Source: Phallusia mammillata
Taxonomy: Eukaryota
Reading direction: 5' to 3'
Length of the DNA: 64,000 nt
NCBI GenBank assembly: GCA_965637545.1
Contig: OZ281494.1
Span: 13,206,001 to 13,270,000, forward strand
The first letter of the stretch is position 1. Each line of letters begins with the position of its first letter. Below, piece after piece: positions 180 through 31,578 of this stretch. The translations under genes and the position numbers were made by a program. Under the pieces are notes generated by a model. The model was not told where the DNA came from. It searched no databases and saw nothing but the letters and a program-made list of their open reading frames with translations.

Positions 180-3100
180 GTCTAATGAAACAAGGTCGTT
201 ACGGGTCGAACCTAACAAAGCGCCATAAAGTTCCTAACAAACGAACCTGAAAATTATCAATCAAGCGTGTGAAATGAAAGAAATCGATATAACTTATAAG
301 ATTACTGTAGTAACGCCCAAACAACACAGTAATTTAGCTATATTTTAATTTAATCATCGGTCTTTCCTGTTTTTATGCGATCAACCATACGACCATGAGA
401 CACTGTACGAAGTATAATAAATGTCACTGTTAGGAAAGTTTATACCCAGGGCCTGCAAGCTTATCTGTGTTATTACAATCATTTTTTTAGTGTAGCCTAT
501 GGACAACTTAACAGTATGTGGAGAGCAGACTGCAAGAAAAAATGCTAGTTGTAAAGTGTTTCTTGCAACATTGATAGTGCAGGGCAAAAACTCGTGCCTA
601 TCATCAGAGAACCTTCAAACATGCGCTGTGGGATGTCTTTCTCTTTTTTAAACATGTCCAGGATATTCTGCTCATGCGCTTCCGTTACGCTTTTGTGCTG
701 TCCCGCACACATTTTTGGGCTTCTGGGAGAAAGCGAAAAAAACGCTCGTCAACACTGGATTTTAAATTTTTCTTTTGGCGCAGAAAACTATAGTTTATTG
801 TGCACACACAAGACGCAAAACTTAATATTCTTTAGTGGGGGTGGAGCTACAGGAAATTTCGATTATATATAGATAACAAAAGGGCAAAGCATTTTATGTC
901 TGTTTTCCATTTGCTTGTGTCATAAACGCGCAAACCTTGAGATCCATCTACAAGTTGCGAATGAATTACTTTATGCAATGTTTTTTGGTTATTGAGGTAT
1001 TTTAAATTGAGTCAAGGTTTTGGATAGGGGTGCTTAGGCTTTTAAGTTAAACTAAGTTTTACAGCGTTGTCAAACTGGTGTTTACTGTGTTGACCTGTTT
1101 TGTAAACCGCAAGTGATCGTAAACAATGAACCGGCATGCAAAAAGAACAGTCTGTTCATTTTCTCCAGGTTTGTAATCTTACTAAACACAGTTATCTTGA
1201 GCATTTGATCATAAAATTAGTCAATGTATGTGCATTGTATTTTTGCAATGTTTTCACATTTATGCACAGGAACACGGTTTGGTAAACACCCTACCAGCCA
1301 GCAAAGCTTGCGACAGATCACTTCCTTAAAATATATTTTTGCCATGCTACCTCATGCAGGAGGCCTTAAAAACATCGTGCTCGAATCTTTGACGTCAATT
1401 ACCGCAACAAATGCCACGAAGCGTTTTATGTAACAAAACGTAAACAAATGATTGGATTGTGTGTAGCCACTTTCAGGACTGCTTGGAAAAGAGAGTTTAG
1501 TGCCTTAAAAGCGAGTGTTTCATATGTTTAGTGCAAAGGGATTTCGAAAAAAGCTGTATTTTGCAAATGCCAGACTAAACTTGTTATGTGCATCTTTTTG
1601 AGCTTATCTTTGTTTAAAATACGAACGTATTGTTTAAAATACAAACGTATTGAATGCAACTGTTCAGTATTTGGTGACGTAGCAATTCGCATGTTCTCGG
1701 TACTGCCTCGCTGTACTTTGCTTTGAGCTATTATTTAATTAAATGAACTAACGAAATGAGGTCAACATTATTCAATGACTTTACAATTGGGAATAAGTTT
1801 CACCAATCGAACTTTGACCTTGAGCACAACCATATACGATAACATTGTCGTCATCTTTAACGTCAATGCACCAGTCAACGCAGAACCTCGAGGTAATAAA
1901 CTCAATTGCCCTGATCCCAAACATTATGCATACTTTGCACTTTTATTCTTAAACCAGAGCGAGAGAGTTCAAAGAGCTGTAGATGCGTGAAGTGTGGTTT
2001 TATCGATTGTGTATTTCATTGGACGAAAGTATGCGTAATAAAAAGTTAAATTACTTGTAGCAAACAATCCAGAAGATAAGCAATCATATTATTGTTTGTT
2101 AGTCTTGATTAAACCTTTTAATCGCATCAGTTTCATGCCGACTTCACCACAATGCCTCGCTGAAGTTAATCGATAACGCGATCGTTATCTTGGGGTGAAA
2201 GAAAAACGCATTTTTTCTTCTGAACTAGCTGTATATAAAACAGTCGCATACAGAGCGTTCATTTACCGGTGCTAAGTTTAATGCCAGGAAACCTAATATG
2301 TTTGGTGAGCAACGTGAGAGCCGTGCGACAGCCAAGTCATTAGTCAAACAGAATTCGACACGGCGCATGATTGCACACGTTTTTTGCAAAAAAGGTTGCT
2401 GAACGCCCCTATATGAGTCGTTAACAGTGCTTTGGAGTTTGTTTGCAGCAGCAAGTACTTGGGTAGTGTTGTACAATTGCCGGGTATTGGTTTATTGCTG
2501 CGAGGTGCATTCTGATTGTTGATATACTTTCTTGTTTTAGTGGGTGTGTAACTGTTGAGAAAGTTGAGAAACCTGCTGCGAGGAACAAATATTGCCCTGT
2601 TGACGGCGGCTCAGACTAGCCCACTTCCTATCGTGTCGTACTGGCGTCCGTTTATGGTATTGCTACAGTTTTCTGGAAGTAGGTTAATCCTCTGAGAGCT
2701 TGTGTGGTAAAAGGGTCAGTTAAGTTGAGTTTACTTTGCTTGTTAAAAGAAAACATCGCGACACCACAGTGCTAAGACAATCACCAAGCTGGTAATAGAG
2801 GCGCAATGTTGAAACGGTAAGGGACGCAAAGCATTGTAGGTCACGGTTGGTGGATCATGACTGAACGCTCTGCAGCTACACCACCAAAAAGCATCGAAAG
2901 TATAATAGTAGAACTGGATCTGAAAAGTGTATTAAAAAGGGACTCTTAACTGCAGCTGTGAAAATACTTTTGTTGCAGTTGTAGATAGCGACAGTCTTTT
3001 ATTGTGTCAGTCGCTATTGTATAGTGTTGCTACCAGCAGTCTTTGAGCCTGTGGTTTTTTAGTATGTTGTAAGCGAGCTGTGTGAAAGCGTTTTGCACAA

Positions 3101-3242
3101 TTTTCCCAGACTGTTTTCGTCCAACAAGGCAACGCGGTTTTCACGTTATTCAAACAAAAGCTTTTTTTCCCACGCGATCTTTGTATTTGACATTTTCCCT
3201 TTGGTGTTTACCAGACTTGTTGACGCCCTTTAAAAGGTTGGG

Positions 3243-3492
3243 CCGAACGTCTTTCTAAATCACGAGGTCGCGATTGTGCAAGGTTCGCGGTTTTGGTACA
3301 AAATGGTCGTTTTGTGATTTACGGTGTGGTCGTTCGGTGATTATGACCATGGACCACGTAGCTAACAGCTAACACAGAACCATTGTTCGACCGAACGGCC
3401 TTCTAAACCACGAAACCCAAATAGTGCAAGGTTTACGGTTTGACGGAAAGTGTCGTGATTTATATCTTACAGGCTTCTTGTCGATAATGAAT
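3243..3492 (+). repeat. Imperfect direct repeat (about 100 bp units, period 148 bp) upstream of the first paralog
   Basis: ccgaacgtctttctaaatcacga...gtgcaaggttcgcggttt...gtgattt (from 3243) versus ccgaacggccttctaaaccacga...gtgcaaggtttacggttt...gtgattt (from 3391). Confidence 0.55.
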
Positions 3493-3706
3493 GAGTTTTA
3501 TTATCTTGCCGCCCATGCGCTATGCGCTATAAAACCGTGTTGGACAAGGTTTAAATACAGCTACTATTTTATTCGAATGTGTTAAATCGAGTGTTTGAGG
3601 CGACTATGCCACTTCACTGAATGCTCGTTACTTTATTACATGTTTGTTTGATTTCAGGGTCAAGTTGAAAAGTATTAGGTGATTTGAAGCTATTGTTGTT
3701 GTTATT

Positions 3707-6700
3707 ATGGATATACACCAGCACAGATCACCGGCAATCGGCACAAACCCGATTCAAGCCTCGTTCTCGAACCACCAAACCTGCACTTTCTCAAGTGATT
3801 TCCAGAAAGCCAACTTTGCTAACCACCTAGAACTGTCTGTTCCTCCAAGCCAAGAAAATGCTAGAATTTCACAAACTGTTCGACAGCGACCGAGGAACCA
3901 GCAGGGTCAAATGCAAGCTGGAATGGCCAACAGTCACATGCAACCGACCTGCAATATTAACCAGAAAGTGATTCAGTACAACTTGCAGGTTAATAAAGTT
4001 TCCGCCATCCATGCACCAAATAACCAACCAACAACTTCCCGACATGGTTTATTTTCGAACACTTCAAGTACCCAGTACGGTGACCAACAGTTTTATGCAA
4101 ACCAGCAAGTGAATATGGTAAGTAACGAGCAACCACCCAGTACGCTAGGCACGGCTGATATTGAAATAGTCATAAATCAACTAACTGTAACACAGGGTTC
4201 AAATAACCGTTTTAACAACTTACAACAACATCAAAGAGCTGCACAACCGACCAATAACCAGTTTGTCAACATGCGAAACTCGAACAATCTGCATTTCACC
4301 AACCAGAGCCAAAACAACCAGCACCAGACAAACCATGGACCACCTCGTCAACACAGAACAATTGCAAGCTCCCATACTCCCGTAAGTTATTTCCAGTCCC
4401 AACCTCAAAACAACGCTAGAATGCCAATCAATCCCCAAAACAACCAGCAAGGTCAGGTTTCGCAATGGAATGAACATCAAGGATACAGCCGACAACACTC
4501 TCAAAGCAACCAGCTACTTCAAAACAATCCTGCAAACGTGAATTATTTACCTACCAGTGGTGGGGTTAGTTTACCACAACGCCATGTGATGAGCATGCAA
4601 GCCAACTACCAAACGAATGTACAGCAAAACTACACTCGACCAGTACGTCAGCAACTGCGAACTCATTTGACTCAACACCAGAATGTGAACGCAGAAATTC
4701 AAAAAGCCGGGCGGACTTTTTCCAACATTAAAACACCACCGCAGAATGTCAATCTTTTTTCAAACCCGAACCTACATACCAACCAGAGTCGACAAGCAGC
4801 CAATCAAACCTGTACAAAAGAAGACAAACAATCGTACAAACATTTAAGAGGTCAAAAGATAAAATCACCTGAACTCCGGCCGTTCGTGGATCTCAATAAA
4901 ATCACAAATGGTGAAAATATGGGACTTGCAAAAGATGATTCAACTGTGAGAGTCCCTATTTTATCACAACTTCTTCGCCAAATTAATCACGACGCCATGC
5001 AAAAAGGACCCAATGTACCTCTGAAGCCATTTGTTCCCAATCATGGATGTACGCCAAATAGTAACCAAGACAAGGTAAAAGAAGTTCAAAGTAACCAACC
5101 AACAACTGAAAGTTCTTCGGGAATACCTGGGTCCCAGGCGACGTACATTCCCCGCTTGCCCAAAACACCACGAGCATCTAAAATTATTCCACAACGTCGT
5201 CCTTCAAATAAGTTAGCAACACTTGAGTTGGCAAAAGAACATCAAATGAAACCTCAACAAGCACCAAGCGAGACCAACGCTCTCTTAACTCCAGGGCAAA
5301 TACAGGCTTTTGATCAATTGTTATATGGATCCAACAATACCCAACCCCGCCAGACTGGTTCGAACTCTCACATGTTACCTAATGGACAACACCAGTCACT
5401 AATAGCAACCAACCACTCCTTATCTGAGACTCATCAGCCCTCCGCAAGTTCCTGCAGGTCTCTCTTTGAACCTGATCCATCACCTACCAGATCGATACAT
5501 CACCAGTCACAAAATATAACCGACCACTCCCATACCGAAGCCCACCAGTCCACTGAAAGATCCTGGATGTCGATATTTGAACCTGACCTGTCACCAAGTG
5601 GACATCAGTCTTCCTTCGGGTCCAGTGACTCTTTGTTTGATGGATTGCCCTCTGGTCACGATCTTGGCCGTTCTGCTTCAGCCGATTGTCACTTGCCTCA
5701 GAAACATGGGTATAACTTTATTCGACCCCAGTCAGCCCCAAACGCCGACCCAATAACACCAATTACAAAACCACATCTTAAACCACCGACCTTGTCCAGT
5801 TTACCAACTGCTGACCAAACTTGTCCTGTGGCTGAACATGAGGATAGAAAATCGGTTCTGTTGTCTCGAATTCCAAAACTTTCACCACGATCAACATCTC
5901 CAGAAAACCAAAAAAATAGTGAAAATGCCAAAAGTTTGCAAGTGCCAAGTCTGATCAAAGTCGAGAAAAGTCCAGAAACAACAGGTGCTGAGGAAGATCC
6001 ACCGCTGATCAAAGTCGAGGAAAATCCAGAAACACCAGATGCTGAGGAAGATCCACCACTAATTGCAATCTCTGAAATATTTTCCTCCTACAAAAAGACG
6101 AAATCAGATGATGATGTGATATTTATTAAGGATTCCCCTCCAGCCAAGTCTAAGTCAGACGAGAAAATTATCAAACAAAAACCGCTGTCAGCTCGAAAGA
6201 TAAAAATGGAGCACCATGAAGTTATAGACTTGACATCCGATGACGAACACAGGCAAGATCACGAAACTAAAAGTGAGTCCCCTTCCAAAGCTGCTAAGAT
6301 CGTTTCTAAACCTTCAATGAAATCGCCTACAGCGGAAGAAGACCGCCTGAGGCTAATTCAGGATGATGTTGAAATTCTTCTTCAAATGGGAATCCCAAAA
6401 TATCGCCATCGCTCTATTAGGAATAAACGCCATAGAACAGATAACATGAACAGTTCGGAAGACGAGATTTCTGGGAAGAAAAGAAGATGTCACCAAACTA
6501 GGAAAAGTTCCAGTGAAGATCCTGTTATTCCAGATGCTCCACTGCCTTCTGAAATGAAAGAAGTCATTCCCGAATTGCCACAAAACATCCCTGGAAACTC
6601 CACGGAAACGAGTGCAGAGAACTCGCAACTAAAAAAACGAAGCAGACTGGCTATTCCAAAATCAAAACCTCCAAGAATGGACTTGGTTTATACTTATCAC

Positions 6701-6859
6701 CTTAAACGTTTACGTAGAAATGATGTTGGTGTCACTTCGTATTCTCCTCAATTTCTTGCAAAAAATGCGTCGATTCTTAAACGTACCAAGCGTTGCAAAG
6801 TTGTTCTTTCCGATATTTTCTCCATTAAGTCGTGCATTGATAAAGTAACGAAGTCGTGA
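3707..6859 (+). CDS. Single-exon 1050-aa Q/N-rich disordered protein, paralog 1 of a local unnamed family
   Basis: Uninterrupted 3.15 kb ORF in AT-rich DNA with an acceptor-like tttgatttcag at 3647-3657. Shared motifs: KSPELRPFVDL, DDVIFIKDSPP, EVIDLTSDDE, DDVEILLQMG, PRMDLVYTYHLKRL, CKVVLSDIF. Confidence 0.85.
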   Translation: MDIHQHRSPAIGTNPIQASFSNHQTCTFSSDFQKANFANHLELSVPPSQENARISQTVRQRPRNQQGQMQAGMANSHMQPTCNINQKVIQYNLQVNKVSAIHAPNNQPTTSRHGLFSNTSSTQYGDQQFYANQQVNMVSNEQPPSTLGTADIEIVINQLTVTQGSNNRFNNLQQHQRAAQPTNNQFVNMRNSNNLHFTNQSQNNQHQTNHGPPRQHRTIASSHTPVSYFQSQPQNNARMPINPQNNQQGQVSQWNEHQGYSRQHSQSNQLLQNNPANVNYLPTSGGVSLPQRHVMSMQANYQTNVQQNYTRPVRQQLRTHLTQHQNVNAEIQKAGRTFSNIKTPPQNVNLFSNPNLHTNQSRQAANQTCTKEDKQSYKHLRGQKIKSPELRPFVDLNKITNGENMGLAKDDSTVRVPILSQLLRQINHDAMQKGPNVPLKPFVPNHGCTPNSNQDKVKEVQSNQPTTESSSGIPGSQATYIPRLPKTPRASKIIPQRRPSNKLATLELAKEHQMKPQQAPSETNALLTPGQIQAFDQLLYGSNNTQPRQTGSNSHMLPNGQHQSLIATNHSLSETHQPSASSCRSLFEPDPSPTRSIHHQSQNITDHSHTEAHQSTERSWMSIFEPDLSPSGHQSSFGSSDSLFDGLPSGHDLGRSASADCHLPQKHGYNFIRPQSAPNADPITPITKPHLKPPTLSSLPTADQTCPVAEHEDRKSVLLSRIPKLSPRSTSPENQKNSENAKSLQVPSLIKVEKSPETTGAEEDPPLIKVEENPETPDAEEDPPLIAISEIFSSYKKTKSDDDVIFIKDSPPAKSKSDEKIIKQKPLSARKIKMEHHEVIDLTSDDEHRQDHETKSESPSKAAKIVSKPSMKSPTAEEDRLRLIQDDVEILLQMGIPKYRHRSIRNKRHRTDNMNSSEDEISGKKRRCHQTRKSSSEDPVIPDAPLPSEMKEVIPELPQNIPGNSTETSAENSQLKKRSRLAIPKSKPPRMDLVYTYHLKRLRRNDVGVTSYSPQFLAKNASILKRTKRCKVVLSDIFSIKSCIDKVTKS

Positions 6860-18636: not shown

Positions 18637-20188
18637 GTTTAGGACGAGAACACGCAGGGGTAAAAGGCCTAGTAGCATTGTAGGTACTGGAAACTAAAAT
18701 GTTGAATAAGTAATCCGTCCCCAATCCACCACACTACAATAACCATCAGAGCTACTGCTGGACCTGGAACCAATTCTTACCATGTTTTTGTTTGAACTGG
18801 GTCAACATCAGAAGCAAACATCGCCCTTTTCTCTTACATGGTTGTAAATAGCGAGGTTTACCTACTCCTGGCGCCAACATCGCTGTGGGGGGTCGACATT
18901 AACATAGCAAGTTGGCACAGGTTGATGGCCAAAAAAACATTTGGTAACAAAGTTACAGAAAACAGAAATGCTACCAACAAGCAGCTAACAATTAAAGTGG
19001 GTCAACGTACTGTGAATGTGAACTGTGAAGTCATGGCTATTGGTAAAAGGTTGTTTCTGGTCCACATAAAACAGCGTGTTTACAACGGGCACGAACGAGA
19101 TGACGTAACACAAGACTTCCTTCCTTTTTAACCAAACATAAACGCTTTCCGCAGGAACAGTAAAACAGTAGCTTATGTATTCTAATTCGTTTTTTTATTG
19201 TTCGCACGTTTGGCGATTATTCTTGTGTGTCCAGGTTTCTTCTTCACTTTGCCGTTGGTGTCTTGTTGCATAAAACTGCTTCTTTGGCGTCATGTGATTT
19301 CATGTGAGCGAATTGTGCCTTCTAAAAGCCTGTTGAAAATTTACCTGTGGCCAAGGTCTCTAAAAAGATTTGTTTGATAACTATAGTTTCTAGAAGTTTC
19401 TTTTGTGTTACCAGTTTTTGTGACACTATGTACAAAGTTGTTTTTTAGATTTTTTGTTTCAACAAATGAGGTGTCCGTATGAGCGTACTCCAGAATGTGA
19501 AAAAATACAATATATAATGTTCGTTTCACGCCCCTGTGCAAGACATCGGTGGCGAAATAGACATTGACAAATATTGCGTTTGTTGCGGGACAAATTATTA
19601 TTATAGGCTTATAACAAACGTATGTGCACCAGCTGTGGTGTTATTTTGGTAATCACATAAACAATTGCACCCGATAATTATGCAAGATGTTGTTCTAATG
19701 TTAGTTAATCTGACCAGGAAAGCTATTTAGTGACCCGAATATTTGCCAAATAGCAAAACATGACCTATCGTTTCGTGTGTACAATCATTAACCACATAGC
19801 TGGGGTATCTAGCCCAAGTTCTAACTTTGGGATTCCATGTTTGTTTGCCATGTTTAAAGCAAATGGTGTAAAATACATGTAAAACTGATTCTGCACTTCT
19901 GTCTTATCCCACTGACGGTGATTGCAGAATTACTTGTCCTGCGTTAACCAAACAAAGACTTGACCTGTCATAACTAAAGTTGTGTATGCACAATACACAT
20001 AGACGAATATGGAATGTATTTATGGCGATGGCAGTAGAAAAAATGGCCCATCACGACTTCGTTACTTTATCAAAGAACAACTTAGCAGCGTTTGGTACGT
20101 TTGAGAATCGACGCATTGTTTGCAATAAATTGAGGGGAATACTAAGTGACACCAACATCATTTCTGCGTAAACGTTTTAGGTGATAAG

Positions 20189-20907
20189 TAGGGCAAATAT
20201 TTTTTGACTTGTCAAAAAAAGTCAAAATTTTGTCAAAATTTTTAGAATAGGTCAAAAATTGTCAAAATTGTTTACAAAGTCAAAATTTTTTACAAAGTTA
20301 AAATTGTTTACAAACTGCATTGTCGTGGTGTTGTAGAGGTTGCACTGCCAGCAAACTATTCGTTTTACACCTTGTAGCCTACTTTATACTGTTGTAATTG
20401 GCCCATTGCCCCAATTATTGCGAATCATAAACCATCAAGTGAGTGAAACAATTAGGTTGATATGGCGTGATGCTCAACACACCTCAAAACGTGCAAAATT
20501 TTGGTAGGTCCCAATTCATTTTACGGTAGCTGCAGGTTAGGTGCAGCTCTTGCTTCGGTTTTGCTTTAGATACTTCATGTATCTTTCGTTTATACAAATG
20601 TATTGAATAATTTTCGTTGTGTCTTAGCTGCAGTTTTTTGGCAGTGATTTTTAATCAGCTCATTCCCTTTTCAGAATAGGTTAGGTCTATGTTCAGATTT
20701 TTGCCCTTCTCTTAGACTTTTGCACATTCTTTCGCTCTAGTTAGATTAGCCTACAGCCATATTTTAACTTTTCGTACAATAATGCGTCATTTAACCACTT
20801 GAATTCTTCATAGGTCAAAATTTTGTCAAAAAAAGTTTTTTAAAGTCAAAATTTTCAATTTGTGGGTCAAAATTTGTCGTTTTTTAGGTCAAAAAATAAT
20901 CGCCCTA
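20189..20907. mobile_element. Non-autonomous hAT element (Ac-type TSD)
   Basis: TIR tagggcaaatattttttgac / gtcaaaaaataatcgcccta; TSD gtgataag (nTnnnnAn); many gtcaaaattt subterminal repeats. There is a possible frameshifted transposase relic LRCVEHH..INLIV on the minus strand near 20450-20495. Confidence 0.85.
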
Positions 20908-21578
20908 GTGATAAGTATAAACCAATTCCATTCTTGGAGGTTTTGATTTTGGAATAGTCAGTCTGCTTCGTTTTTTTAATTTGCGAGTTCTCTACACTCG
21001 TTTCCTTGGGGTTTCCAGGGATGTTCTTTGGGGATTCGGGATTGACTTCTTTCTTTTCAGAATGCAGTGGAGCATCTGAAATAACAGGATCTTCACTGGA
21101 ACAGGACGAAATCATTTTCCTAATTTGGTGACGTCTTCTTTTCTTCCAAGAAATCTCGTCTTCCGAAATGTTCATGTCATCTATTCTATGGCGTTTATTT
21201 CTAAATGAGCGATGGCGATAATTTGGGATTCCCATTAGAAGAAGAGTTTCAACATCATCTTGAATTAGCCTCATGCGGTATTCTTCCGCTGTAGGCGATT
21301 TCTTTGAATGTTCAGAAACGATCTTAGCAGCCTTGGAAGGGGAGTCACTTTTAGTTTGATGATCTTGCTTGTGTTCGTCATCGGATGTCAAGTCAATAAC
21401 TTCATGGTGCTCCATTTTTATCTTTCGGACTTACAGCAGTTTTTGTTTGATAATTTTCTCATCTGACTGAGACTTGGTGCCACAAATTAACTTGTTTAGT
21501 GCTTTGAAACCTAGACATCTTATGACGTAACAATGCTTCTGATAGTTTCAATCATCACGCCTTGTGTTTGAACTAGAG

Positions 21579-22186
21579 CAGTGGTTCCCAACCGGGAAGG
21601 ATTTCCTCCCTAGGTAGGAATTTTATGAATTCAGGGGAGGAATTTCATAAAAACTGTAAAACAAAATCTGTTGGAAATGTAACAGAATATTTTTGCACAT
21701 ACATTAGGGATATGCATTATAATTTGGATCCGGTTCACATTTAAAACCGATTGGTTGTAAAGGGTCCCGAAACAGACATCTAATTATAAAGTCTTCTTGT
21801 ATATACGGCCGCATGCTACGTTTCAGGCGCTTAAATTAATCGATTATTGTCATAACAAAGTCCATTGTTTTAACATTTTTGTTTTTGGAAACTAGATTCT
21901 TAGTTGTATATCATTGTTTGTGTAGATTTTGGTTGTAGCCTAAGTTTTAGTCAACTAGCAGTATTTAAAAGAGACGAGTAGTATAAAAAGAACTGTACCG
22001 CCAATACAACTACTTTCAGAGCGCAAACGAGAGCAAATTTCGCATTGAGTAGTAATGTGAAATAAATTGATATTTTCAAATGCTAAAATTTTGTATGTTA
22101 TATTTGTTTTTCATCTTATGGGGAGAAATGAATAGTTCGAAAATTGGCAAAGGGAGGAATCTAACAAAAAAGGTTGGGAACCACTG
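21579..22186. mobile_element. hAT MITE inserted in the 5' LTR
   Basis: TIR cagtggttcccaacc / ggttgggaaccactg; TSD aactagag. Confidence 0.9.
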
Positions 22187-22356
22187 AACTAGAGTAACCT
22201 GTAGTTTTGGGTGCTGCGGTGTGCGTTTTTAAACGAGGTCATTATATTGTGGAGAGAATACAGTAAACATCTCGACAGTTCTTATAGTGTCAAAAGACAG
22301 CGTTCAACACAAATTAGCAACAGTTGGGATTATTGACCCGACTACTTTGCGAGAAT

Positions 22357-22374
22357 TGGGGGCTCGTCCGGGAT
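22357..22374 (+). other. Primer-binding site complementary to the tRNA-Pro 3' end
   Basis: tgggggctcgtccgggat, the canonical 18-nt tRNA-Pro PBS (as in MLV), located 2 nt after the 5' LTR. Confidence 0.9.
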
Positions 22375-22420
22375 TAGTTTTCAGTGTTGTTGTCTTACCT
22401 GGTAGTGAACCAAGAAAGAG

Positions 22421-24462
22421 ATGGAAAAGATTGCAGAAGTCGGAAAACAGCTGGGTTTGACTGGCGCCGATTTGGCAAAGTTTATCAACGAGCAACAGGC
22501 GTTTGAACGAGAAGAGCGCCGTTTGGCTAGAGAAGCTGAGGCTATGCGAATACAGGGTGAAGTCGAAGCTGAGGAGCGACGCCGGGCAGCCGAGGACAGA
22601 CGAATACAGGCGGAGGCCGAAGCTGAGAAAAGACGTATCGAGGCGGAGGCTCAAGACAGAGCGCACCAATTGGAGTTAAGAGTTTGGAGTTGGAAATCGG
22701 CGGAGCTCAACGCGAAGCGTCAGCGGGCAAAGCGAAAGCACCCAAGTTACCTGCGTTCGTAGATGGCACAGATGAACTGGATAGTTATCTGTTGCGTTTT
22801 GAGTAGAGATGTACCGAATATTCGGTTTGCCGAATTTATTCGGCCGAATCGATCATTTTTGCAAAGATTCGGTTTCGGCCGAATAATTTGTTGCGATTCG
22901 GCCGAAACCGAATCTTTGACGAACACAAATTTAACGCGTTAAACGTGTCTTTTCTGCTTATTAAGATCCACGCAATCTTTCAAAAGCCCCAACATAACGA
23001 AAATTGCGTCAATGTTTATCTTTTTCAACACATTATCGTTTTCCCCACGGTAGTCCAAAAAATTAGTAATTCATTGGCAGGTTGCCAATCATGCTTAAGG
23101 CAATTTTAAACCCCACAGAACTGAAATAAGGACGAAACACAACTATTTTGCACTGGCTGCCTGGTAGATAAACATTTTTTCACGTCAAACGCATAGCGTA
23201 CGACTTCGCGTGACGTCATAAATGATTCGTTTGATTCGGCCGAATTTATTCGGCAAAACCGCCGAATATTCGGTTTCGGCCGAATCGAAATTTAGCCGAT
23301 TCGGTACATCACTAGTTTTGAGCGTTTTGCTGTTACTTGCAAATGGGAAAGATCCGAATGGGCGAGCGCGCTTAGTGCCTTGCTAACGGGTCGAGCATTG
23401 GATGTCTACTCACGACGAAGCAGTTATTATGATCAACTTAAGCTTTCTGACGACGAAGCTTTATTATGATCGACTTAAACAGGCGCTACTCAACAGGTAC
23501 GACATGAAAGAAGAAGGATATGGATGTAAATTTCGAAATTCAAAGCCGGAAAAAGGAGAAGTCCTCAGTTCGCAGTGCAGCTGCAGAACTATCTGCAAAA
23601 ATGGGTGTTGTCCGGATGTTCCATCGAATGGAAAGATGTAAGTTCGCTTTTGGTGAAGGAGCGGTTCCTCCAGTCATGCCCAAACGAGCTATACTCATCA
23701 AAAGGAACGGGCACCGAAAACTTTAGATGGTTTGACAGGGATCGCCGAGCAGTTTCTGGCAGCTCACAGCCAAGAGATGGCCCACGATGTGCGTCAAGAC
23801 GTACGGGAGCTTTGTGCTGAATGCAAAGCAAGCGGGGCATGTGACTGAGGTTTGTCCGAAGCGTAAACCTGATGTCAGAGTACCTAGAAAATGTTTCCTG
23901 TGTGACAAAGTGGGACACATCGCGAAAGATTGTCATTCGTGCGTTGCCACCGGTGAGGATGTCCAGCTCGGCAGCATGTTCGATGGAGGGAGTCGAGCAG
24001 TTTAAAATCGAGCCCAATCTGCCATTGCGTGAAGGCGTGGTAAACAACCAGACAGTGACTGTGTTAAGAGACACAGGTTGCACGGGTGTTCTGGTTGACA
24101 GGAAATTTGTCCATGATGGTCATGTCTCAGACAGGCCAGGTTTTCTTAGTTTGGCCGACGGTTCTGTCGTATCAGCTGAGGTGGCCAAAATGGAAGTGAA
24201 TACTCCATACTTTACGGGAGAAGCGTTATGTTTGGAAAACCCGTCGCATGATTTGGTCATTGAAAATATTTGTGGAGTCCGACCAGCGGATGATCCAGAT
24301 CCGCTGTGGCGGAAAGCTAACGCAGTTTCGACGCGGTTTCAAAAGAAGACGTCCAAGACCAAAGCAAAATCTCGGGTAGTACCGCCAAACGAGGGATGGC
24401 CATTGAAATACCAGACGGAGATCGAAAAGGTCCAAGATGCAACCGTTGAAGCCATTACATGA
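22421..24462 (+). pseudogene. Frameshifted gag (coiled coil, SCAN-like capsid C-terminal domain, CCHC knuckles) and aspartic protease
   Basis: MEKIAEVGKQLGL..., PKLPAFVDGTDELDSYLLRFE|RFA...WASALSALLTGRALDVYSR, KERFLQSCP, CFLCDKVGHIAKDC, TVLRDTGCTGVLV. Confidence 0.85.
22804..23314. mobile_element. hAT MITE (Ac-type TSD) nested in gag
   Basis: TIR tagagatgtaccgaat / attcggtacatcacta; TSD gttttgag; ccgaat/attcgg subterminal arrays. Confidence 0.9.
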
Positions 24463-24671
24463 GTTGGCCTAATTAAATGCGTGTTTTGTTTAACGTTGTG
24501 TTTTCATGTTCGTTCTTTAATGTCAATTTGTGTATTTTGTTATGTCGAAATTTGAGTATTTTCGGGGTATTGCCACAAATTAACTTGTATAGTAAATTGA
24601 AACTTAGACATCTTATGACATAACAATGCATCTGATAGTTTCTATCATCACGCCTTGTGTTTGAACTAGAG

Positions 24672-24972
24672 CAGGGCTGTGCAACCTGCGGCCCTTAGTT
24701 AAAGGTTGTGCGGCCCGCAGAGACGCTTGGATTTTAAATGTAATAACAAACGAGTCTAACTAATATATGTTTTTGAGCAGATTAATGCGTCCAATGCTAT
24801 TTTTCTGCAACCTGGCAATATGTGACTAGAATCAAATGCGAATTTTAGTTGTAGTTGGGCATATTTGGTTAGCAACAAATTGAAATCACCTTGTGTTATA
24901 CACAGGTACGGCCCGGGATCTAATTTTGGCAATTATATTTGGCCCTACAGCAACAAAAGTTGCACACCCCTG
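24672..24972. mobile_element. A different hAT MITE inserted in the 3' LTR
   Basis: TIR cagggctgtgcaac / gttgcacacccctg; TSD aactagag. It sits at the same LTR position as 21579-22186. Confidence 0.9.
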
Positions 24973-27900
24973 AACTAGAGTAAAACGAGGTCATTCTGTT
25001 GTGGAGAGAATACAGTAAACATCTCGACAGTTCTTGGTGCGCTAAAAGACAGCGTTCAACACAAATTAGCAACAGTTGGGATATCTGACCCGACTAGTTT
25101 GCGACACTTGGCTGGATCCTCAATAAAAATCACATCATTGCCGGATTTTGTTTTTTTGTAGGAGGAAAATATTTAAGAGATTGCAATTAATGGTGGATAT
25201 TCCTCAACATCTGGTGTTTCTGGACTTTGATCAGACTTGGCACTTGCAAACTTCACTATTTTTTTGGTTTTCTGGAGATGTTGATCGTGGTGAAAGTTAA
25301 CATTCTTGTCGCTGCCACCGCTTAACGCAGGTGATCCTTCCAATATGGCGGCCGTACCTTTCATATAGGCTTCACTTTTCCGCTTGGATGCGCTATCCAG
25401 GTTTTTTTGTAGATCAGTGGTTAAAGCTAATGGACACTTGTTGAACTACTCGGCTTAAGTAGCAGTGGACACAATAGGCTGTTAGACCGCATTACTTGAA
25501 TAAAAGGAGCCAGAGGGCTATTGAACACAAGTGATTGTCAAAGAAATCGATCAGTCGTAACTATACAAACACGAAAGTGGGTCATTACAAGCAAACATAT
25601 TGTTTGATAGTGAAAAATTCCATTAACACAGTACATAAAAATGATTATACACCCATCAAGGCATTACGGCACTTAAATTAGGTTACAACTTATTACATAT
25701 TTAGCTTTTTAGTAATTTTAGTATTATACCAATATATTACCACATAAGGTCAAAACGTATCTTAAACATTGGTTTTGCCTTTACTTGAGATTCCTCTGAT
25801 AGATCGACAGGGTGAATTTTTTTACTCCCCAAGAATGTCGAATTTGATGTCAATTTCTTGAGCTATCTAAATAGCCTGGAACAAAGGCTGTCAAGCGATG
25901 TAAACGAATACTGGCAATATTAATCAAAATTATACGTTGTCAAATCACAGGTATTCATTTTAGTTGTAGCCTAGCCTACGCTTTTTCAGTGAACTTCTTC
26001 CATTTTATGCCGATAGCAAACTGACGGGTCACTGTGGTGCAGTCTGTCCATTTTGTTGAAGTGTAGTAACGCACAATTAAAAATAAAGCATATGCATGTA
26101 GTTATTCGTACTGTCACCTTTTTCCTAGTTGCAATTTGTACTTACATATTGATAAAATCGTTCGGCAGCCTACATGTAAAATGTCTTTGCTTTGTAACAA
26201 AAAATAAACGTTAGCCTAATTGTCTTTTGTTGTGGTTTAAAACTTCCTTTGTTGCCCACAAGACCGCTGGCTGTTTTCTAATCAGAAAGAAAATATTGCG
26301 ACTTTAATTCAAACGACAAAGAAAGACTAACTTAACCACACACCCAAGATGACTAATTTGGACAGAAGACTGACTATCCGCCAACAGGTTAAAACCAAAG
26401 ACGACTTAAACAATAATGTTGTTTTGTGACATTATAAACGCATGGCTTTAACTGATTAGTATCCCCAAACAGTTTGACGACCGTTTGCTTAAAAAACTGA
26501 TGAAGCCAAACCATGTTTGGGTTTGTAAACTGCATGTTGCTTGCTTCGAGGGTAATCGTTAAAGCGTGTTGATTTGCCCTATCACGTGGGCACAGGCGCA
26601 AGATCGAACGATGGGTACAAAAGTCCGTCACGGTGCAGTGGTCGCGCATGGTAACTGAAGTCTGAAGTCTCGATAATCGTTTCCTTTTTTCTCACGGGCT
26701 TGGCGCCATTCAGTGAGTACTGGGCAAAGAGAGCAACTGCAGTGCTTGTTTACCGAAAGCGGGAGATTAGTAGATCACAGTTGCAAGCAAGCGTTTTTAT
26801 TGCATTTGAGAATCAGTTTTACTTGGTTATCAGTTATACCTGGTTTAAAGCTAAAGTATTACTATCCTGCTTTGATTTTACTTTCATTGCTTTCAGCAGC
26901 TATAGTTATAAATAAAGTTTAATTTGAACTACAGTAAGTTTTGTAAAACTGTAACATGATATTTTACTTGTTACCCTTTAAAGTAGGTTAGTACATGCGA
27001 GCAGTAAACAGGAGTGTTAATACTGTTTGAAAGTGGATGTCAAGCGTGACAAGCGATGTGTGTGTGTGTGCGTGCTGTTGGTCTTGCTTTTGTGGCACCA
27101 CTGTGTCATTTGCGCATGTTGGTTCATAATGGCGGCTGGGTACCAGGCGGTTAACGATTGACTAGACACGAGCAAATCATTGACTTAAATAGCCTACACC
27201 GTTCAACGTCGAAAGCGCCTAAGAACGTTTTTTAAAAGTGTTTAAGTATCGTATTCATGGCACTAACTGTAAAGGTTGGGCATTTCTTTGGCATAAAAAT
27301 AACCCGAGTTACTGCGATTAGACAATTTATTCTATTGCCTTTGTGTCGTTAGTGAGAGACATTTTCTTTTTTGTTCATTGTTCAAAAACAAACGATAATT
27401 ATGCGGTTGACTGAATATTACGTTAAGCAAGTTCTGTGCGCAATGTGAGCAATTAAGTGACAAGCTGTGTCACCGCACTAAAATGTAAGAACAAATTTTG
27501 CCTGTGGGCCCATCTGAGACGTGTATCCATACACTTCAATAAAGAAGGTAACGAAGTGGCTAACTGCGCCAATTTGTTACTGTCTGGTTGTTGAATTTGA
27601 TATACAATCTAGTTCTTGGTTTTACGGATCGGGAGATCATTTGTGCGGACTGGCAAAAAAACTGAGGACATATAACAATTATGTGTTAAGTGAAGGCCTG
27701 CTTTAGCCTCCCAAAGAAATTGACTAGTAGACTTTTGAGTGATCTAAAAAGTGGTGTGAATCTTAAATGTTTGATCTGTAAAAGTCTGACAAAGTACAGA
27801 ACCAGTTCGGCGCACTAGTTAGCTAGATGTTAGTGTTTGGTATTAAAACGTTAGCCTAAGGCAGAAAAGCGCTTTTCTCCCGGTCCAACGTACTAGACAT

Positions 27901-29256: not shown

Positions 29257-31578
29257 ATGAATGATAACCAGAAGCCAATATTGCACCGAAAAGGCATATC
29301 ACTCGGAAGTTGTGTAAAAGGAAAAACACCTTTGTTACAAAATCAAAAACGTGTTTGTGCATCTGCTCCAAGTACAGTACAACAACAAACGAGTACCACA
29401 AAAAATCTAAGCCCACCTCCTTCGTACGAATCGTCAGTGGGTACGAATAATCCGGTTCTTAATTTATCCAACAAGGCATCTCAAATGAGTTTCAGCAAAC
29501 AAGTTTTTCAGTGCAATATTAATATAAACGCTCTTCCCTATATGGATGTTTCGGCACCAGGTACTACGCAAACTAACAGCAACCGGGCAACTGTGCACCA
29601 TAGCGGCAACCAACACGACAACAACAGGATTATTGCACCAGGCAGCCAAGTGTTGAATTCATGGCATGGGCTGACGTATGACAGCAACGGAAAATTGATC
29701 CATCCGAGTTTACTACCTCAGCGAACGGGCTATGTTAGCTCTTTCACTTCCCGGCCGAGACATAATATCCCGCCGACCTCAAAACCCAGTACTGTTGTAA
29801 ACCAAAGTATACCTTCGTTTGACCAGACTTACTTCTACCACCCATCATCGATGGCCAATCAGACAAACTCTGTTAGTTTGGTAAGAAATCTCAATTCCAC
29901 ATCAGTCCCACTGACACCTAATTTCAACAACTTGCAAGTTTGTCCTTATCAGCCGAGGCGATCCAATGCATGTTCAAACAATCCACAATCGAGTAGTGGC
30001 CCGAAACAAAGTGCACCTCGCCAGGCTCAGGCTCCTGTATGTAGCACACCAACTCCTGTAACGATGGTACAACTGCGCCGACTCGATACAACGAGTGTCC
30101 TTGCACAATCTAACAGATACAATCATCAAACTGCGACAGTTTCGACCACCGGGCAACGGATTAACACGAAAAACTGTAGGGTGCAGTATGTTGCTGCAGT
30201 GGATGTTCAAACCAGTTCGCAATCAAAGCAATCAACCATTCCACAGGCACCACACCATGATGACCAATCTCAACTAGTGCTATATTCGAAACAGACGCAG
30301 TTGCAACATCGACCGCTACAAATTCAACGAAATATTCGAGTTCGACAACCTCAAATAAATCGTGCGGGGCAGCAACATCGCACGCCACTAATTTCGGAAC
30401 AGCAAAAATGTCCAACGTTCTACCCACAGGATCAACCAAAGTTTAAACCACCACAAAGGGTTCCTGCAGAAAACCCGGCAAAGTCTCACGACTGCAATAA
30501 TTCTGGATTACAAAACAGTGAATCACCTCAAAGTCGAGATTCTTCACCAACATTGTCTCTAGAACAAAACCTAGATGATGTAACTGCAGAACGAGGCAGA
30601 CGAAAAGGTAAGCTCCCTCTTGTAACATTTGTCGAGTCAAAATCGATTGGCGACGCGGAAAAAAGTTCAACAGCGTCCGAGTCTCCGTCGGTACTTAGTG
30701 AAGATTCAAGTCAAAGCGATTTGCAAGTGCTGTCTGTTTACTCTGTGCAGAATCAAGACTCTTCAAGCAAAAATAAAATGCAAGAAACAAAGGAGCAGAG
30801 TGCTTTAAAGTCAGCCGTTGACAAGTTTGCGAACAATTTACCCACGAACATTACAAAAGAACAAATTGACACCATCGTTGAAAAACTTCAGACAAGCAAT
30901 TATAGTTGCAAAACAGTGGAAACGATAATAGAGATGTTGCAAAGCCATCAGACAAGGAAAAGAACCGTTTCGATGACAAGTGCACAAGATGTCAGTCCGT
31001 CTTCAAAAGCAAACAAACTTTTAACTCCGTCCAAATGGCGAGCGAAAACGAGATTGACAAATAAAGTTGCGAGAGAGGAAAACAATGAAGATGTGAAAAA
31101 TGTACAAAAAGCTGCTAAGGAACTTTTGAACTTGGGGATGCCTACCAGTGAAAATTACAAGGTGGCATTTGAAAGAATGAAAAGGAGAAGAAAGGCGACT
31201 GAGAATAAAGATCAGAGAATTCCACTCGTGCACAACATTAAAGAAGAACCAGTAGATTTTCCAATTGAAAACAATGAACTTACTGACGAAGATGCAGTAA
31301 TTGTGTCAAGATTTAGTACAAAGCGGAAGGCAAGAATTACATGCGGATTACCTCACAAACAACTGCGCTTTGATCATGTGTACAAAAGTCATCTTAAACG
31401 GTTACATGAGGTGCAAGAAATTTCTCCACATTTGCTCACTCAGCTTCAAAATTCGGACAGATTTCAGGTAAAATTAGAGCGCGTTCCCTCGGACATATTG
31501 TGTAAAAAGAGTTCTGTAAATATAGTTGATATTTTTGATCGACGTCAAACCGCCGAGCTTGTAACATGTAAAAAATGA
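29257..31578 (+). CDS. Single-exon 773-aa Q/S/T-rich disordered protein, paralog 2
   Basis: Uninterrupted ORF preceded by ttttgcag (~29231-29238). Motifs: KLPLVTF, KELLNLGMP, IKEEP, LRFDHVYKSHLKRL, FQVKLERV, VNIVDIF. Confidence 0.8.
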   Translation: MNDNQKPILHRKGISLGSCVKGKTPLLQNQKRVCASAPSTVQQQTSTTKNLSPPPSYESSVGTNNPVLNLSNKASQMSFSKQVFQCNININALPYMDVSAPGTTQTNSNRATVHHSGNQHDNNRIIAPGSQVLNSWHGLTYDSNGKLIHPSLLPQRTGYVSSFTSRPRHNIPPTSKPSTVVNQSIPSFDQTYFYHPSSMANQTNSVSLVRNLNSTSVPLTPNFNNLQVCPYQPRRSNACSNNPQSSSGPKQSAPRQAQAPVCSTPTPVTMVQLRRLDTTSVLAQSNRYNHQTATVSTTGQRINTKNCRVQYVAAVDVQTSSQSKQSTIPQAPHHDDQSQLVLYSKQTQLQHRPLQIQRNIRVRQPQINRAGQQHRTPLISEQQKCPTFYPQDQPKFKPPQRVPAENPAKSHDCNNSGLQNSESPQSRDSSPTLSLEQNLDDVTAERGRRKGKLPLVTFVESKSIGDAEKSSTASESPSVLSEDSSQSDLQVLSVYSVQNQDSSSKNKMQETKEQSALKSAVDKFANNLPTNITKEQIDTIVEKLQTSNYSCKTVETIIEMLQSHQTRKRTVSMTSAQDVSPSSKANKLLTPSKWRAKTRLTNKVAREENNEDVKNVQKAAKELLNLGMPTSENYKVAFERMKRRRKATENKDQRIPLVHNIKEEPVDFPIENNELTDEDAVIVSRFSTKRKARITCGLPHKQLRFDHVYKSHLKRLHEVQEISPHLLTQLQNSDRFQVKLERVPSDILCKKSSVNIVDIFDRRQTAELVTCKK

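What the first reader, a model, noticed from the sequence alone, without database searches (positions are those of the whole stretch)
5948..6247. Dense SUMO module: psi-K-x-E acceptor sites next to acidic SIMs
Paralog 1 has IKVE twice and IKME, plus DDDVIFIKDSPP and EVIDLTSDDE. The latter is a PIAS-type VIDLT SIM followed by an acidic, CK2-like tract. Paralog 3 keeps both SIMs (GVLCIEDSPP, HFVDLTSKDE) and IKKE. Paralog 2 has IKEEP and DEDAVIVS. Paralog 4 has two [D/E]DI[K/G]IVS.QSL repeats and LKAE. Multi-SIM plus multi-SUMO-site disordered proteins typically form nuclear bodies or condensates (established for PML and DAXX-type proteins; inference here).
Basis: partly seen in the sequence, partly recalled or inferred. 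Interest (0 to 1): 0.7.

Follow-up and report, generated by a model that had tools for sequence, protein, structure and literature searches.

The report
SUMO-binding motifs in ascidian orphan protein
The stretch encodes a disordered part of an expressed, sea-squirt-specific protein carrying two conserved, textbook-looking SUMO-binding motifs, so SUMO binding is likely, while most of the proposed SUMO-attachment sites are a recent repeat and no better than chance.

Summary

**The gene is real.** RNA-type contigs from four studies show a Ciona-type spliced leader joined at 3656/3657, and an in-frame 78-nt intron (4117-4194) removed. The transcript ends near 6900.

**Two motifs look like genuine SUMO-interacting motifs (SIMs).**
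- SIM1 is DDDVIFIKDSPP. SIM2 is EVIDLTSDDE.
- SIM2 shares VIDLT-x-DDE with the MCAF1/ATF7IP SIM peptide and its VIDLT core with PIAS1.
- Both lie in AF2-predicted disorder.
- Both are conservation islands between paralogs 1 and 3, which share identities in only about 19% of alignment columns.
- The core-to-core spacing (35 residues) and the TS-x-DE (CK2-type) and DSPP flanks are also kept.

**The acceptor-site half is weaker.**
- The two IKVE sites are the two copies of a young 54-nt tandem duplication and are absent from paralog 3.
- With one copy removed, psi-K-x-E density is at chance (P = 0.14).
- Only IK[M/K]E, six residues before SIM2, is conserved, and it could be part of a basic nuclear-localisation patch instead.

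**No relatives were found.** Pfam, PDB sequences, two word-based searches and an exhaustive profile search of 1.84 billion proteins all gave nothing.

**Verdict.** This is a probable SUMO-binding module in a lineage-restricted nuclear adaptor family. The condensate and nuclear-body idea is untested.

The parts
2233..2265 (+). TATA-like box (TATATAAA, 2233-2240) and the transcript 5' end at about 2265 for paralog 1
   Evidence: In one search a contig of run X2 begins at 2265 directly behind a template-switch-oligo tail. One search shows the TATA sequence about 27 nt upstream.
2265..3657 (+). Outron, removed by spliced-leader trans-splicing. The acceptor AG is at 3656-3657.
   Evidence: In one search, loose ends at 3656 in X2 and X13 read oligo tail + ATTCTATTTGAATA, and the genome continues AG. 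This gives the 16-nt Ciona SL (PMC1488885). No ORF of 60 aa or more lies on the + strand of 2265-3657.
3707..6859 (+). Paralog 1 coding sequence. It is 1050 aa unspliced and 1024 aa after removal of the in-frame intron 4117-4194.
   Evidence: Searches give the ORF. One search shows the GT..AG joint 4116>4195 in all four runs, with contigs ending at 6894-6906. One search confirms the spliced ORF stays open.
4877..4900 (+). RPFVDLNK, a PxVxL-type (HP1 chromoshadow-binding-like) motif. It is conserved as RPFVDFSK in P3, QPFVKLRK in P4 and LPLVTF in P2.
   Evidence: It is a conservation island in the P1/P3 alignment. The HP1 reading comes from general knowledge and was not tested.
5951..6057 (+). 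54-nt tandem duplication of 2.0 copies, encoding LIKVE[K/E].PET..AEEDPP twice. It carries both IKVE psi-K-x-E sites and two acid-flanked LIKV cores.
   Evidence: TRF, 92% matches. One search shows the pseudogene copy has a single unit. One search shows it is not conserved in P3.
6107..6142 (+). SIM1: DDD-VIFI-[K/E]-DSPP. It has an acidic N-flank, an aliphatic core and a conserved SP site.
   Evidence: It is conserved in P3 as VLCIEDSPP. Run X13 carries 6128 A>G, which gives K808E. The pseudogene copy also has GAG at this codon.
6197..6214 (+). KIKMEH, the only psi-K-x-E that is conserved (P3 has KIKKEK). It lies six residues upstream of the SIM2 core and sits in a basic patch, RKIK.
6218..6247 (+). 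SIM2: E-VIDLT-SDDE, a PIAS/MCAF1-type SIM with two CK2-consensus sites (T843, S844).
   Evidence: P3 has HFVDLTSKDE, with the same 35-residue offset from the SIM1 core. Literature match.
6335..6397 (+). Conserved amphipathic helix EEDRLRLIQDDVEILLQMGIP
   Evidence: AF2 helix at residues 174-195 of the fragment, with a 10-residue block pLDDT of up to 86. Searches show it is conserved in P2 and P3.
6419..6490 (+). Basic clusters (RNKRHR, GKKRRC), which are likely nuclear localisation signals
   Evidence: Basic clusters sit at the corresponding place in all four paralogs. The NLS function is inferred.
6671..6820 (+). C-terminal box PRMDLVYTYHLKRLRR ... KVVLSDIF, the family signature
   Evidence: One search gives an AF2 helix here with pLDDT about 72.
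32631..35279 (-). Paralog 3 (882 aa). It keeps SIM1 (33306-33341), IKKE (33234-33251) and SIM2 (33201-33230).
   Evidence: RNA-like runs of the same studies hold it in full.
29257..31578 (+). Paralog 2 (773 aa). It has NIKEEP (31234-31251) and DEDAVIVS (31285-31308), a weak SIM-like motif at a non-homologous position.
38284..39615 (+). Paralog 4 (443-aa ORF; the first ATG is codon 9). It has two [D/E]DI[G/K]IVS.QSL repeats (38815-38856 and 38974-39015) flanking its PFVKL motif, plus LKAE (39244-39261).
19033..25298 (-). Inverted, broken pseudogene copy of the 3' third of paralog 1. Its pieces are 25298-25106, 21477-20908 and 20190-19033.
   Evidence: 81-90% nt identity. The pieces are separated by inserted DNA, including an element with a retroviral-type aspartic protease ORF. 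One search shows a frame-shifting 64-column gap and a TAA in place of GAA.

Best explanation
The stretch 5948-6247 encodes an intrinsically disordered segment of a transcribed, spliced-leader trans-spliced gene in an ascidian with the Ciona-type spliced leader. The gene is one of four very divergent tandem paralogs with no detectable relatives elsewhere.

The working parts of the segment are two SUMO-interacting motifs whose cores start 35 residues apart:
- SIM1, DDD-VIFI-[K/E]DSPP
- SIM2, VIDLT-SDDE

Proposed mechanism, all inferred:
1. Each aliphatic core adds a beta-strand to the groove between the beta2 strand and the alpha1 helix of SUMO.
2. The acidic flanks contact SUMO's basic surface. 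For SIM2 these flanks would include CK2-phosphorylated T843/S844, and for SIM1 a phosphorylated SP serine.
3. Two SIMs at fixed spacing give bivalent, avidity-driven binding to poly-SUMO or multi-SUMOylated nuclear proteins.
4. The conserved lysine in RKIK[M/K]E just upstream of SIM2 may be a SIM-assisted SUMO acceptor.
5. The two IKVE sites are a recent, P1-specific add-on.

The family also has a PxVx[L/F] motif, basic clusters and a C-terminal helical box. Together these make the protein most likely a nuclear adaptor that links SUMOylated chromatin proteins, and possibly HP1, to whatever binds the C-terminal box.

Shown here: the motifs, their conservation, disorder and expression. Inferred: SUMO binding, phosphoregulation, SUMOylation and nuclear or chromatin localisation.
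For: - **Motifs present:**
- **Conservation:** SIM1, the RKIKxE + SIM2 block, the helix and the C-box are the only identity islands in the C-terminal half of a P1/P3 alignment that has 211 identities in 1118 columns. The SIM1-to-SIM2 core spacing is 35 residues in both.
- **Above chance:** acid-flanked SIM cores number 5 against 0.27 expected, P about 2e-4.
- **Disorder:** AF2 pLDDT is 35-51 over the segment, typical of short linear motifs.
- **Literature match:** VIDLT is the PIAS1 SIM core, and (I/V)DLT cores bind SUMO2/3 (PMC4907222). The PIAS1 VIDLT core and its C-terminal flank are optimised for high SUMO affinity, and RNF4 SIM2/3 are VDLT (PMC3901395). The MCAF1 SIM peptide contains GVIDLTMDDEE and the PIASx peptide VDVIDLTIESSSDEEEDPP.
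- **CK2 precedent:** CK2-phosphorylated serines beside a SIM raise its SUMO affinity in PML (PMC4276917, citing Stehmeier & Muller 2009).
- **Natural variation:** the K808E variant and the E in P3 and in the pseudogene keep or raise acidity next to SIM1.
- **Gene is real and expressed:**
Against: - No experiment and no structure-based SUMO docking could be run.
- No orthologs could be retrieved, so conservation rests on one paralog pair in a single genome.
- P2 and P4 lack SIMs at the homologous positions. They have only weaker SIM-like motifs elsewhere.
- psi-K-x-E density is at chance after removing the tandem duplicate.
- RKIK[M/K]E may be conserved as a basic or NLS patch rather than as an acceptor site.
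- SIM-like strings are common in disordered acidic regions, and many predicted ones do not bind.
Confidence: 0.6

Rival explanations
1. The aliphatic and acidic motifs are conserved for another partner. Candidates are a CtBP-type PxDLS-like site (VIDLTS / FVDLTS), an Atg8/LC3-type site (FVDL in P3), or a strand that pairs with another part of the same protein or a family-specific partner. On this reading SUMO is not involved.
For: x-[IV]-D-L-[TS] resembles the PxDLS core. P3 has an aromatic residue at the first position. Nothing here shows SUMO binding directly.
Against: The proline that defines PxDLS is absent in both paralogs, and the aromatic residue needed for an LC3 motif is absent in P1. 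The exact VIDLT core plus a C-terminal acidic S/T tract is the documented high-affinity SIM layout. A second, independent SIM-type motif at conserved spacing fits multivalent SUMO binding better.
Confidence: 0.15
2. The full reading of the first reader holds. The segment is both a multi-site SUMO acceptor and a multi-SIM binder, so the protein self-assembles through SUMO-SIM networks into nuclear bodies or condensates.
For: There are three psi-K-x-E sites within 85 residues and at least two SIMs. The N-terminal half is 27% Q/N, which is prion-like in composition. Basic NLS-like clusters are present. PIAS-type and MCAF1 SIM peptides are used as condensate scaffold parts in the preprint read.
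Against: Two of the three sites are a young duplication absent from P3 and single in the pseudogene copy. The density is at chance after collapsing it. No localisation or modification data exist.
Confidence: 0.2
3. The motifs are chance features of a fast-drifting, low-complexity orphan ORF with little or no function.
For: No homologs were found anywhere. Four of the five SNPs in run X13 are non-synonymous. A pseudogene copy lies nearby. AF2 predicts almost no fold.
Against: The gene is transcribed, trans-spliced and spliced in four studies. The ORFs of 443-1050 aa stay open in four paralogs. Motif islands with conserved spacing persist although only about 19% of alignment columns are identical. 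By contrast, the true pseudogene copy has acquired a stop and a frameshift at only 10-19% nucleotide divergence.
Confidence: 0.05

Closest known systems
SIM of MCAF1/ATF7IP (GVIDLTMDDEE) and of PIAS1/PIASx (VDVIDLTIESSSDEEE)
   Same: The VIDLT core is identical. It is followed by S/T and D/E residues, and against MCAF1 the match is VIDLT-x-DDE. It lies in a disordered region.
   Different: This is motif-level resemblance only. Pfam finds no SP-RING, SAP or PINIT domains (PIAS) and no ATF7IP binding domain or FN3 (ATF7IP) in any paralog.
Multi-SIM SUMO readers such as RNF4 (SIM2 and SIM3 are VDLT)
   Same: Clustered (I/V)DLT-type and aliphatic SIMs in a disordered stretch, which suggests avidity-based binding.
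   Different: There is no RING domain, so it cannot be a SUMO-targeted ubiquitin ligase itself. The SIM spacing is much wider: the cores start 35 residues apart.
Sp100, CAF-1 p150 and SENP7-type proteins that combine an HP1-binding PxVxL with SUMO sites or SIMs (from general knowledge)
   Same: A PxVx[L/F] motif and SIMs co-occur in one disordered nuclear-looking protein.
   Different: No sequence homology was found. HP1 binding is untested. Two paralogs have F instead of L at the last position.
RESF1 (DUF4617) and NEXMIF (DUF4683), large disordered vertebrate nuclear proteins
   Same: They are the nearest language-model neighbours of both P1 and P2 in the ESM Atlas, at 0.76-0.80. RESF1 is described as a SETDB1-linked silencing factor with no known functional domain (PMC5991520).
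   Different: The scores fall in a range where a third of shuffled proteins also score. P3 gave no usable hit. Pfam shows no DUF4617 or DUF4683 match at E up to 1. This is a lead, not a relationship.

Membership tests
SUMO-interacting motif (SIM), PIAS/MCAF1 type | Aliphatic core of 3-4 residues, [VIL][VIL]x[VIL] or [VIL]x[VIL][VIL] | tested here: met
   VIFI (aa 804-807) and VIDL (aa 839-842) in P1. VLCI and FVDL in P3.
SUMO-interacting motif (SIM), PIAS/MCAF1 type | Adjacent acidic or phosphorylatable flank | tested here: met
   DDD lies before SIM1 and DSPP after it. TSDDE follows SIM2, where T and S both fit the CK2 consensus S/T-x-x-D/E. The P3 flanks IEDSPP and TSKDE keep the same pattern.
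SUMO-interacting motif (SIM), PIAS/MCAF1 type | Located in an accessible, disordered region | tested here: met
   AF2 pLDDT is 35-51 across aa 748-847, with no secondary structure. The alignment was shallow, with only 5 rows.
SUMO-interacting motif (SIM), PIAS/MCAF1 type | Evolutionary conservation relative to flanks | tested here: inconclusive
   Conserved between P1 and P3 with identical spacing, but not at the homologous positions in P2 or P4. No orthologs could be retrieved.
SUMO-interacting motif (SIM), PIAS/MCAF1 type | Physical binding to SUMO that is abolished by core mutation | not testable with these tools
   This needs pull-down, ITC or NMR.
SUMO consensus acceptor site (psi-K-x-E) | The psi-K-x-E string is present | tested here: met
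   IKVE at aa 750 and aa 768, and IKME at aa 832.
SUMO consensus acceptor site (psi-K-x-E) | Enrichment above chance and conservation | tested here: not met
   After collapsing the 54-nt tandem duplicate, 2 sites are observed against 0.68 expected, P = 0.14. Only IK[M/K]E is conserved in P3.
PIAS SUMO E3 ligases | SAP, PINIT and SP-RING (zf-MIZ) domains | tested here: not met
   No Pfam family at E up to 1 in P1, P3 or P4. P2 gave only sub-threshold unrelated hits.
ATF7IP/MCAF1 | SETDB1-binding coiled-coil domain and a C-terminal FN3 domain | tested here: not met
   No Pfam hit. AF2 shows only isolated helices.
RESF1 / NEXMIF | Match to DUF4617 or DUF4683 | tested here: not met
   There is no Pfam hit at E up to 1. 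The only link is Atlas feature similarity of 0.76-0.80, which is below the reliable range.
HP1 chromoshadow-binding PxVxL proteins | A P-x-V-x-[LMV] pentamer, conserved | tested here: inconclusive
   PFVDL in P1 and PFVKL in P4 fit. PFVDF in P3 and PLVTF in P2 end in F. Binding was not tested.

The most novel reading that the evidence does not exclude
The four genes form a tunicate-restricted, rapidly evolving family of disordered adaptors. They would read SUMOylated chromatin through tandem phospho-regulated SIMs and HP1 through PxVx[L/F], and recruit an unknown effector through the C-terminal box. That would make them a lineage-specific heterochromatin or transposon-silencing system, functionally analogous to ATF7IP or RESF1 in vertebrates or Panoramix in flies. 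Tandem duplication and motif turnover would reflect an arms race with the transposons that litter the cluster.
Probability: 0.15. Interest if true: 0.65.

Novelty: new member of a known kind. Interest (0 to 1): 0.35.

Why it matters
If the SIMs bind SUMO, this orphan family gives ascidians, the closest invertebrate relatives of vertebrates, a lineage-specific set of SUMO readers. These readers use the same high-affinity VIDLT-acidic motif as PIAS and ATF7IP, arrived at by descent or by convergence in proteins with no other similarity.

It would also be a compact natural example of how short linear motifs are kept, duplicated (the 54-nt repeat) or relocated (P2, P4) while the rest of a disordered protein diverges almost beyond recognition. 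The protein is short-motif driven and the embryos are easily electroporated, so the hypothesis is cheap to test.

On present evidence it is a plausible but ordinary motif-level annotation.

Tried and rejected
1. **Family assignment.** All of these gave nothing:
   - Pfam on all paralogs
   - PDB sequence search with the 350-aa C-terminus and with a 27-aa SIM2 peptide
   - word-based homolog searches with P1 aa 700-1050 and P3 aa 600-882
   - an exhaustive HMM search of 1.84e9 representative proteins with the 5-row C-terminal profile
   - exact-protein look-ups of P2 and P3

   Not even a self-hit appeared, so this genome's proteins are not in those collections. Absence of orthologs from related ascidians is therefore uninformative.
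2. **RESF1/NEXMIF lead.** ESM Atlas features gave NEXMIF and RESF1 for P1 and P2 at 0.76-0.80, and nothing for P3. I rejected this as evidence of kinship. No Pfam support exists, no paper holds both RESF1 and NEXMIF, and RESF1 is described as having no known domain.
3. **PIAS or ATF7IP membership.** Rejected, because the defining domains are absent.
4. **Further family members in the window.** A six-frame HMM scan found only the four genes and the pseudogene pieces.
5. **A folded domain in the C-terminal 350 aa.** AF2 gave mean pLDDT 46 and pTM 0.16, so no fold search was run.
6. **'Not a real gene'.** Rejected by the transcript evidence.
Full report
**What is at the coordinates**

The stretch 5948-6247 lies inside a 1050-codon ORF at 3707..6859 on the + strand. 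It encodes aa 748-847.

| Motif | Residues | Nucleotides |
|---|---|---|
| IKVE | aa 750 | 5954-5965 |
| IKVE | aa 768 | 6008-6019 |
| DDDVIFIKDSPP | aa 801-812 | 6107-6142 |
| IKME | aa 832 | 6200-6211 |
| EVIDLTSDDE | aa 838-847 | 6218-6247 |

The statements about the other three paralogs are also literally correct. The window has no N.

**The gene is real, and the organism**

I laid contigs of four small runs from four studies on 1800-7700. They show the following:
- Continuous coverage from 3656 to about 6894-6906. The stop codon is at 6857-6859, and an ATAAA-like signal sits at about 6886.
- A GT..AG joint that removes 4117-4194 (78 nt, in frame) in all four runs. A lower-depth retained form is also present.
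- Loose 5' ends at 3656 that read a template-switch-oligo tail followed by ATTCTATTTGAATA.

The genome continues with AG at 3656-3657, after a pyrimidine-rich tract. The joined sequence is therefore the 16-nt spliced leader ATTCTATTTGAATAAG, described for Ciona intestinalis (PMC1488885). A second oligo-capped end at 2265 lies 27 nt downstream of TATATAAA. No ORF of 60 aa or more lies on the + strand between 2265 and 3657, so 2265-3657 is an outron.

That the loose-end tail is a SMART-type template-switch oligo is my own knowledge. These runs behave as RNA rather than DNA: run X6 holds 98% of the P1 words but none of the P3 words. The genome is thus that of an ascidian with the Ciona-type leader. 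The mature P1 protein is 1024 aa.

**The family**

Four ORFs share a collinear set of short islands:

| Paralog | Position | Strand |
|---|---|---|
| P1 | 3707..6859 | + |
| P2 | 29257..31578 | + |
| P3 | 32631..35279 | - |
| P4 | 38284..39615 | + |

The shared order is:
1. a Q/N-rich N-terminal half (16-27% Q+N)
2. a PxVx[L/F] motif
3. SIM-like motifs
4. an amphipathic helix (DRLxxI..VExLLxMG)
5. basic clusters
6. a C-terminal box, PRxDxVYxxHLxxLR ... V.L..DIF

Pairwise BLASTP is only E about 1e-4 to 1e-5 for P1 against each of the other three. It is not significant between P2, P3 and P4.

A fifth copy is an inverted pseudogene of the P1 3' third, at 81-90% nt identity. It is broken by inserted DNA, a frameshifting gap and a stop. 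A six-frame HMM scan found no further members in the window.

No relatives were detected by any search:
- Pfam
- PDB sequences
- two word-index searches
- an exhaustive profile search of 1.84 billion representatives

These collections do not even return the query itself. The blank therefore says the family has no relatives among what they hold. It does not say that other ascidians lack it.

**Is it more than chance?**

For the SIMs, yes. Acid-flanked aliphatic cores number 5 in the C-terminal 350 aa against 0.27 expected from shuffles, P about 2e-4. That count includes the cores of the tandem repeat.

More telling is the global P1/P3 alignment, with 211 identities in 1118 columns. The identity islands in the C-terminal half are exactly these:
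- V[IL]xI[KE]DSPP
- RKIKxE....[IV]DLTSxDE
- the helix
- the C-box

The distance from the first residue of the SIM1 core to that of SIM2 is 35 residues in both proteins: V804 to V839 in P1 and V650 to F685 in P3. The linker sequence between them has largely diverged.

For the acceptor sites, no. The two IKVE belong to the two copies of a 54-nt tandem duplication at 5951-6057, 92% identical. That duplication is absent from P3 and single in the pseudogene copy, so it is young and P1-specific. With one copy removed, 2 sites are observed against 0.68 expected, P = 0.14. Only IK[M/K]E is conserved.

**Why SUMO binding is the best reading**
- VIDLT is the experimentally mutated SIM of PIAS1, and (I/V)DLT cores prefer SUMO2/3.
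- The PIAS1 VIDLT core and its C-terminal flank are described as optimised for high SUMO affinity. RNF4 SIM2 and SIM3 are VDLT.
- The MCAF1 SIM peptide contains GVIDLTMDDEE, so P1's VIDLTSDDE matches it at 8 of 9 positions. The PIASx peptide is VDVIDLTIESSSDEEEDPP.
- In P1 and P3 both T and S after the core have D/E at +3, which is the CK2 consensus. CK2 phosphorylation next to a SIM raises its SUMO affinity in PML.
- SIM1 has the mirror layout, with DDD before the core, and a conserved DSPP after it.
- A natural variant in run X13, 6128 A>G, gives K808E. This turns VIFIKD into VIFIED, the state seen in P3 and in the pseudogene. Variation at that flank is thus between neutral-basic and acidic, and never disrupts the core.
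- AF2 predicts the whole segment disordered, pLDDT 35-51. The only confident elements are the downstream helix (up to 86) and the C-box helix (about 72).

**What remains inference**

The following are inferred from motif knowledge, not shown:
- SUMO binding itself
- CK2 or proline-directed phosphoregulation
- SUMOylation of K833, or of K750 and K768
- nuclear localisation
- HP1 binding through PxVx[L/F]

P2 and P4 carry only weaker SIM-like motifs at other positions: DEDAVIVS in P2 and two DI[G/K]IVS repeats in P4. That fits motif turnover but also weakens the claim that SUMO binding is a family-wide trait. RKIK[M/K]E may be conserved as a basic or NLS patch. Condensate formation is only an analogy, though the Q/N-rich halves make it conceivable.

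**Comparison with known systems**

The module works like the SIMs of PIAS, MCAF1/ATF7IP and RNF4. The protein is a member of none of these, because no SP-RING, SAP, PINIT, ATF7IP domains, FN3 or RING is present.

The ESM Atlas placed P1 and P2 nearest to NEXMIF and RESF1 at 0.76-0.80. That range is reached by many shuffled sequences, P3 gave nothing, and Pfam does not support it. I keep it only as a lead.

**Verdict**

The 'dense acceptor sites' half is mostly a young tandem repeat, and the nuclear-body idea is untested.

This is a new, lineage-restricted carrier of a well-known motif class, so interest is moderate to low (0.35). Interest would rise if the family proves to be a tunicate-specific SUMO/HP1 silencing adaptor.

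Noticed in passing
window 2233-3657: The P1 promoter and outron can be read from RNA contigs. There is a TATA box at 2233-2240, a capped 5' end at about 2265, and a 1.39-kb outron replaced by the 16-nt Ciona-type spliced leader at the AG of 3656-3657.
   Followed up: yes
window 4117-4194: An in-frame 78-nt GT..AG intron lies inside the Q/N-rich region. Spliced and retained forms both occur in the RNA contigs, so the gene is not strictly intronless and may produce two protein isoforms that differ by 26 aa.
   Followed up: partly
window 5386-5595: An internal direct repeat (5386-5484 against 5497-5595, 71% nt identity) encodes S[LI]FEPD[PL]SP. EPDVS and EPDVC strings recur in P3 (QQEPDVST, QMEPDVCN). 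This may be another short linear motif of unknown partner.
   Followed up: no
window 19033-25298: This is an inverted pseudogene copy of the P1 3' third. It is split by inserted DNA that includes an ORF with a retroviral-type aspartic protease (23872-24462, Pfam Asp_protease_2, E = 0.0025, below the gathering score). It also carries a frameshifting gap and a TAA stop.
   Followed up: partly
window 4510, 4730, 4930, 6128, 6498: There are five SNPs in run X13 relative to the window. Four are non-synonymous (N268K, K342E, K808E, T931S) and one is synonymous. This is consistent with weak overall constraint on the disordered protein.
   Followed up: partly
window 3600-6900 and 32631-35279: Run X6 holds 98% of the P1 words but next to none of the P3 words, while other runs of the same studies hold both. 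This suggests the paralogs are expressed in different samples or stages.
   Followed up: no
window 30865-30939: P2 has two similar helix-like segments, IDTIVEKLQ and TVETIIEMLQ, in the place where P1 and P3 have SIM2. This may be a P2-specific structured insert.
   Followed up: no
window 43635-44447 (-): A 270-aa P/S/N-rich ORF ends in a hydrophobic, transmembrane-like stretch (AILLGLALIWW). It has no Pfam match and is probably an exon of an unrelated neighbouring gene.
   Followed up: no
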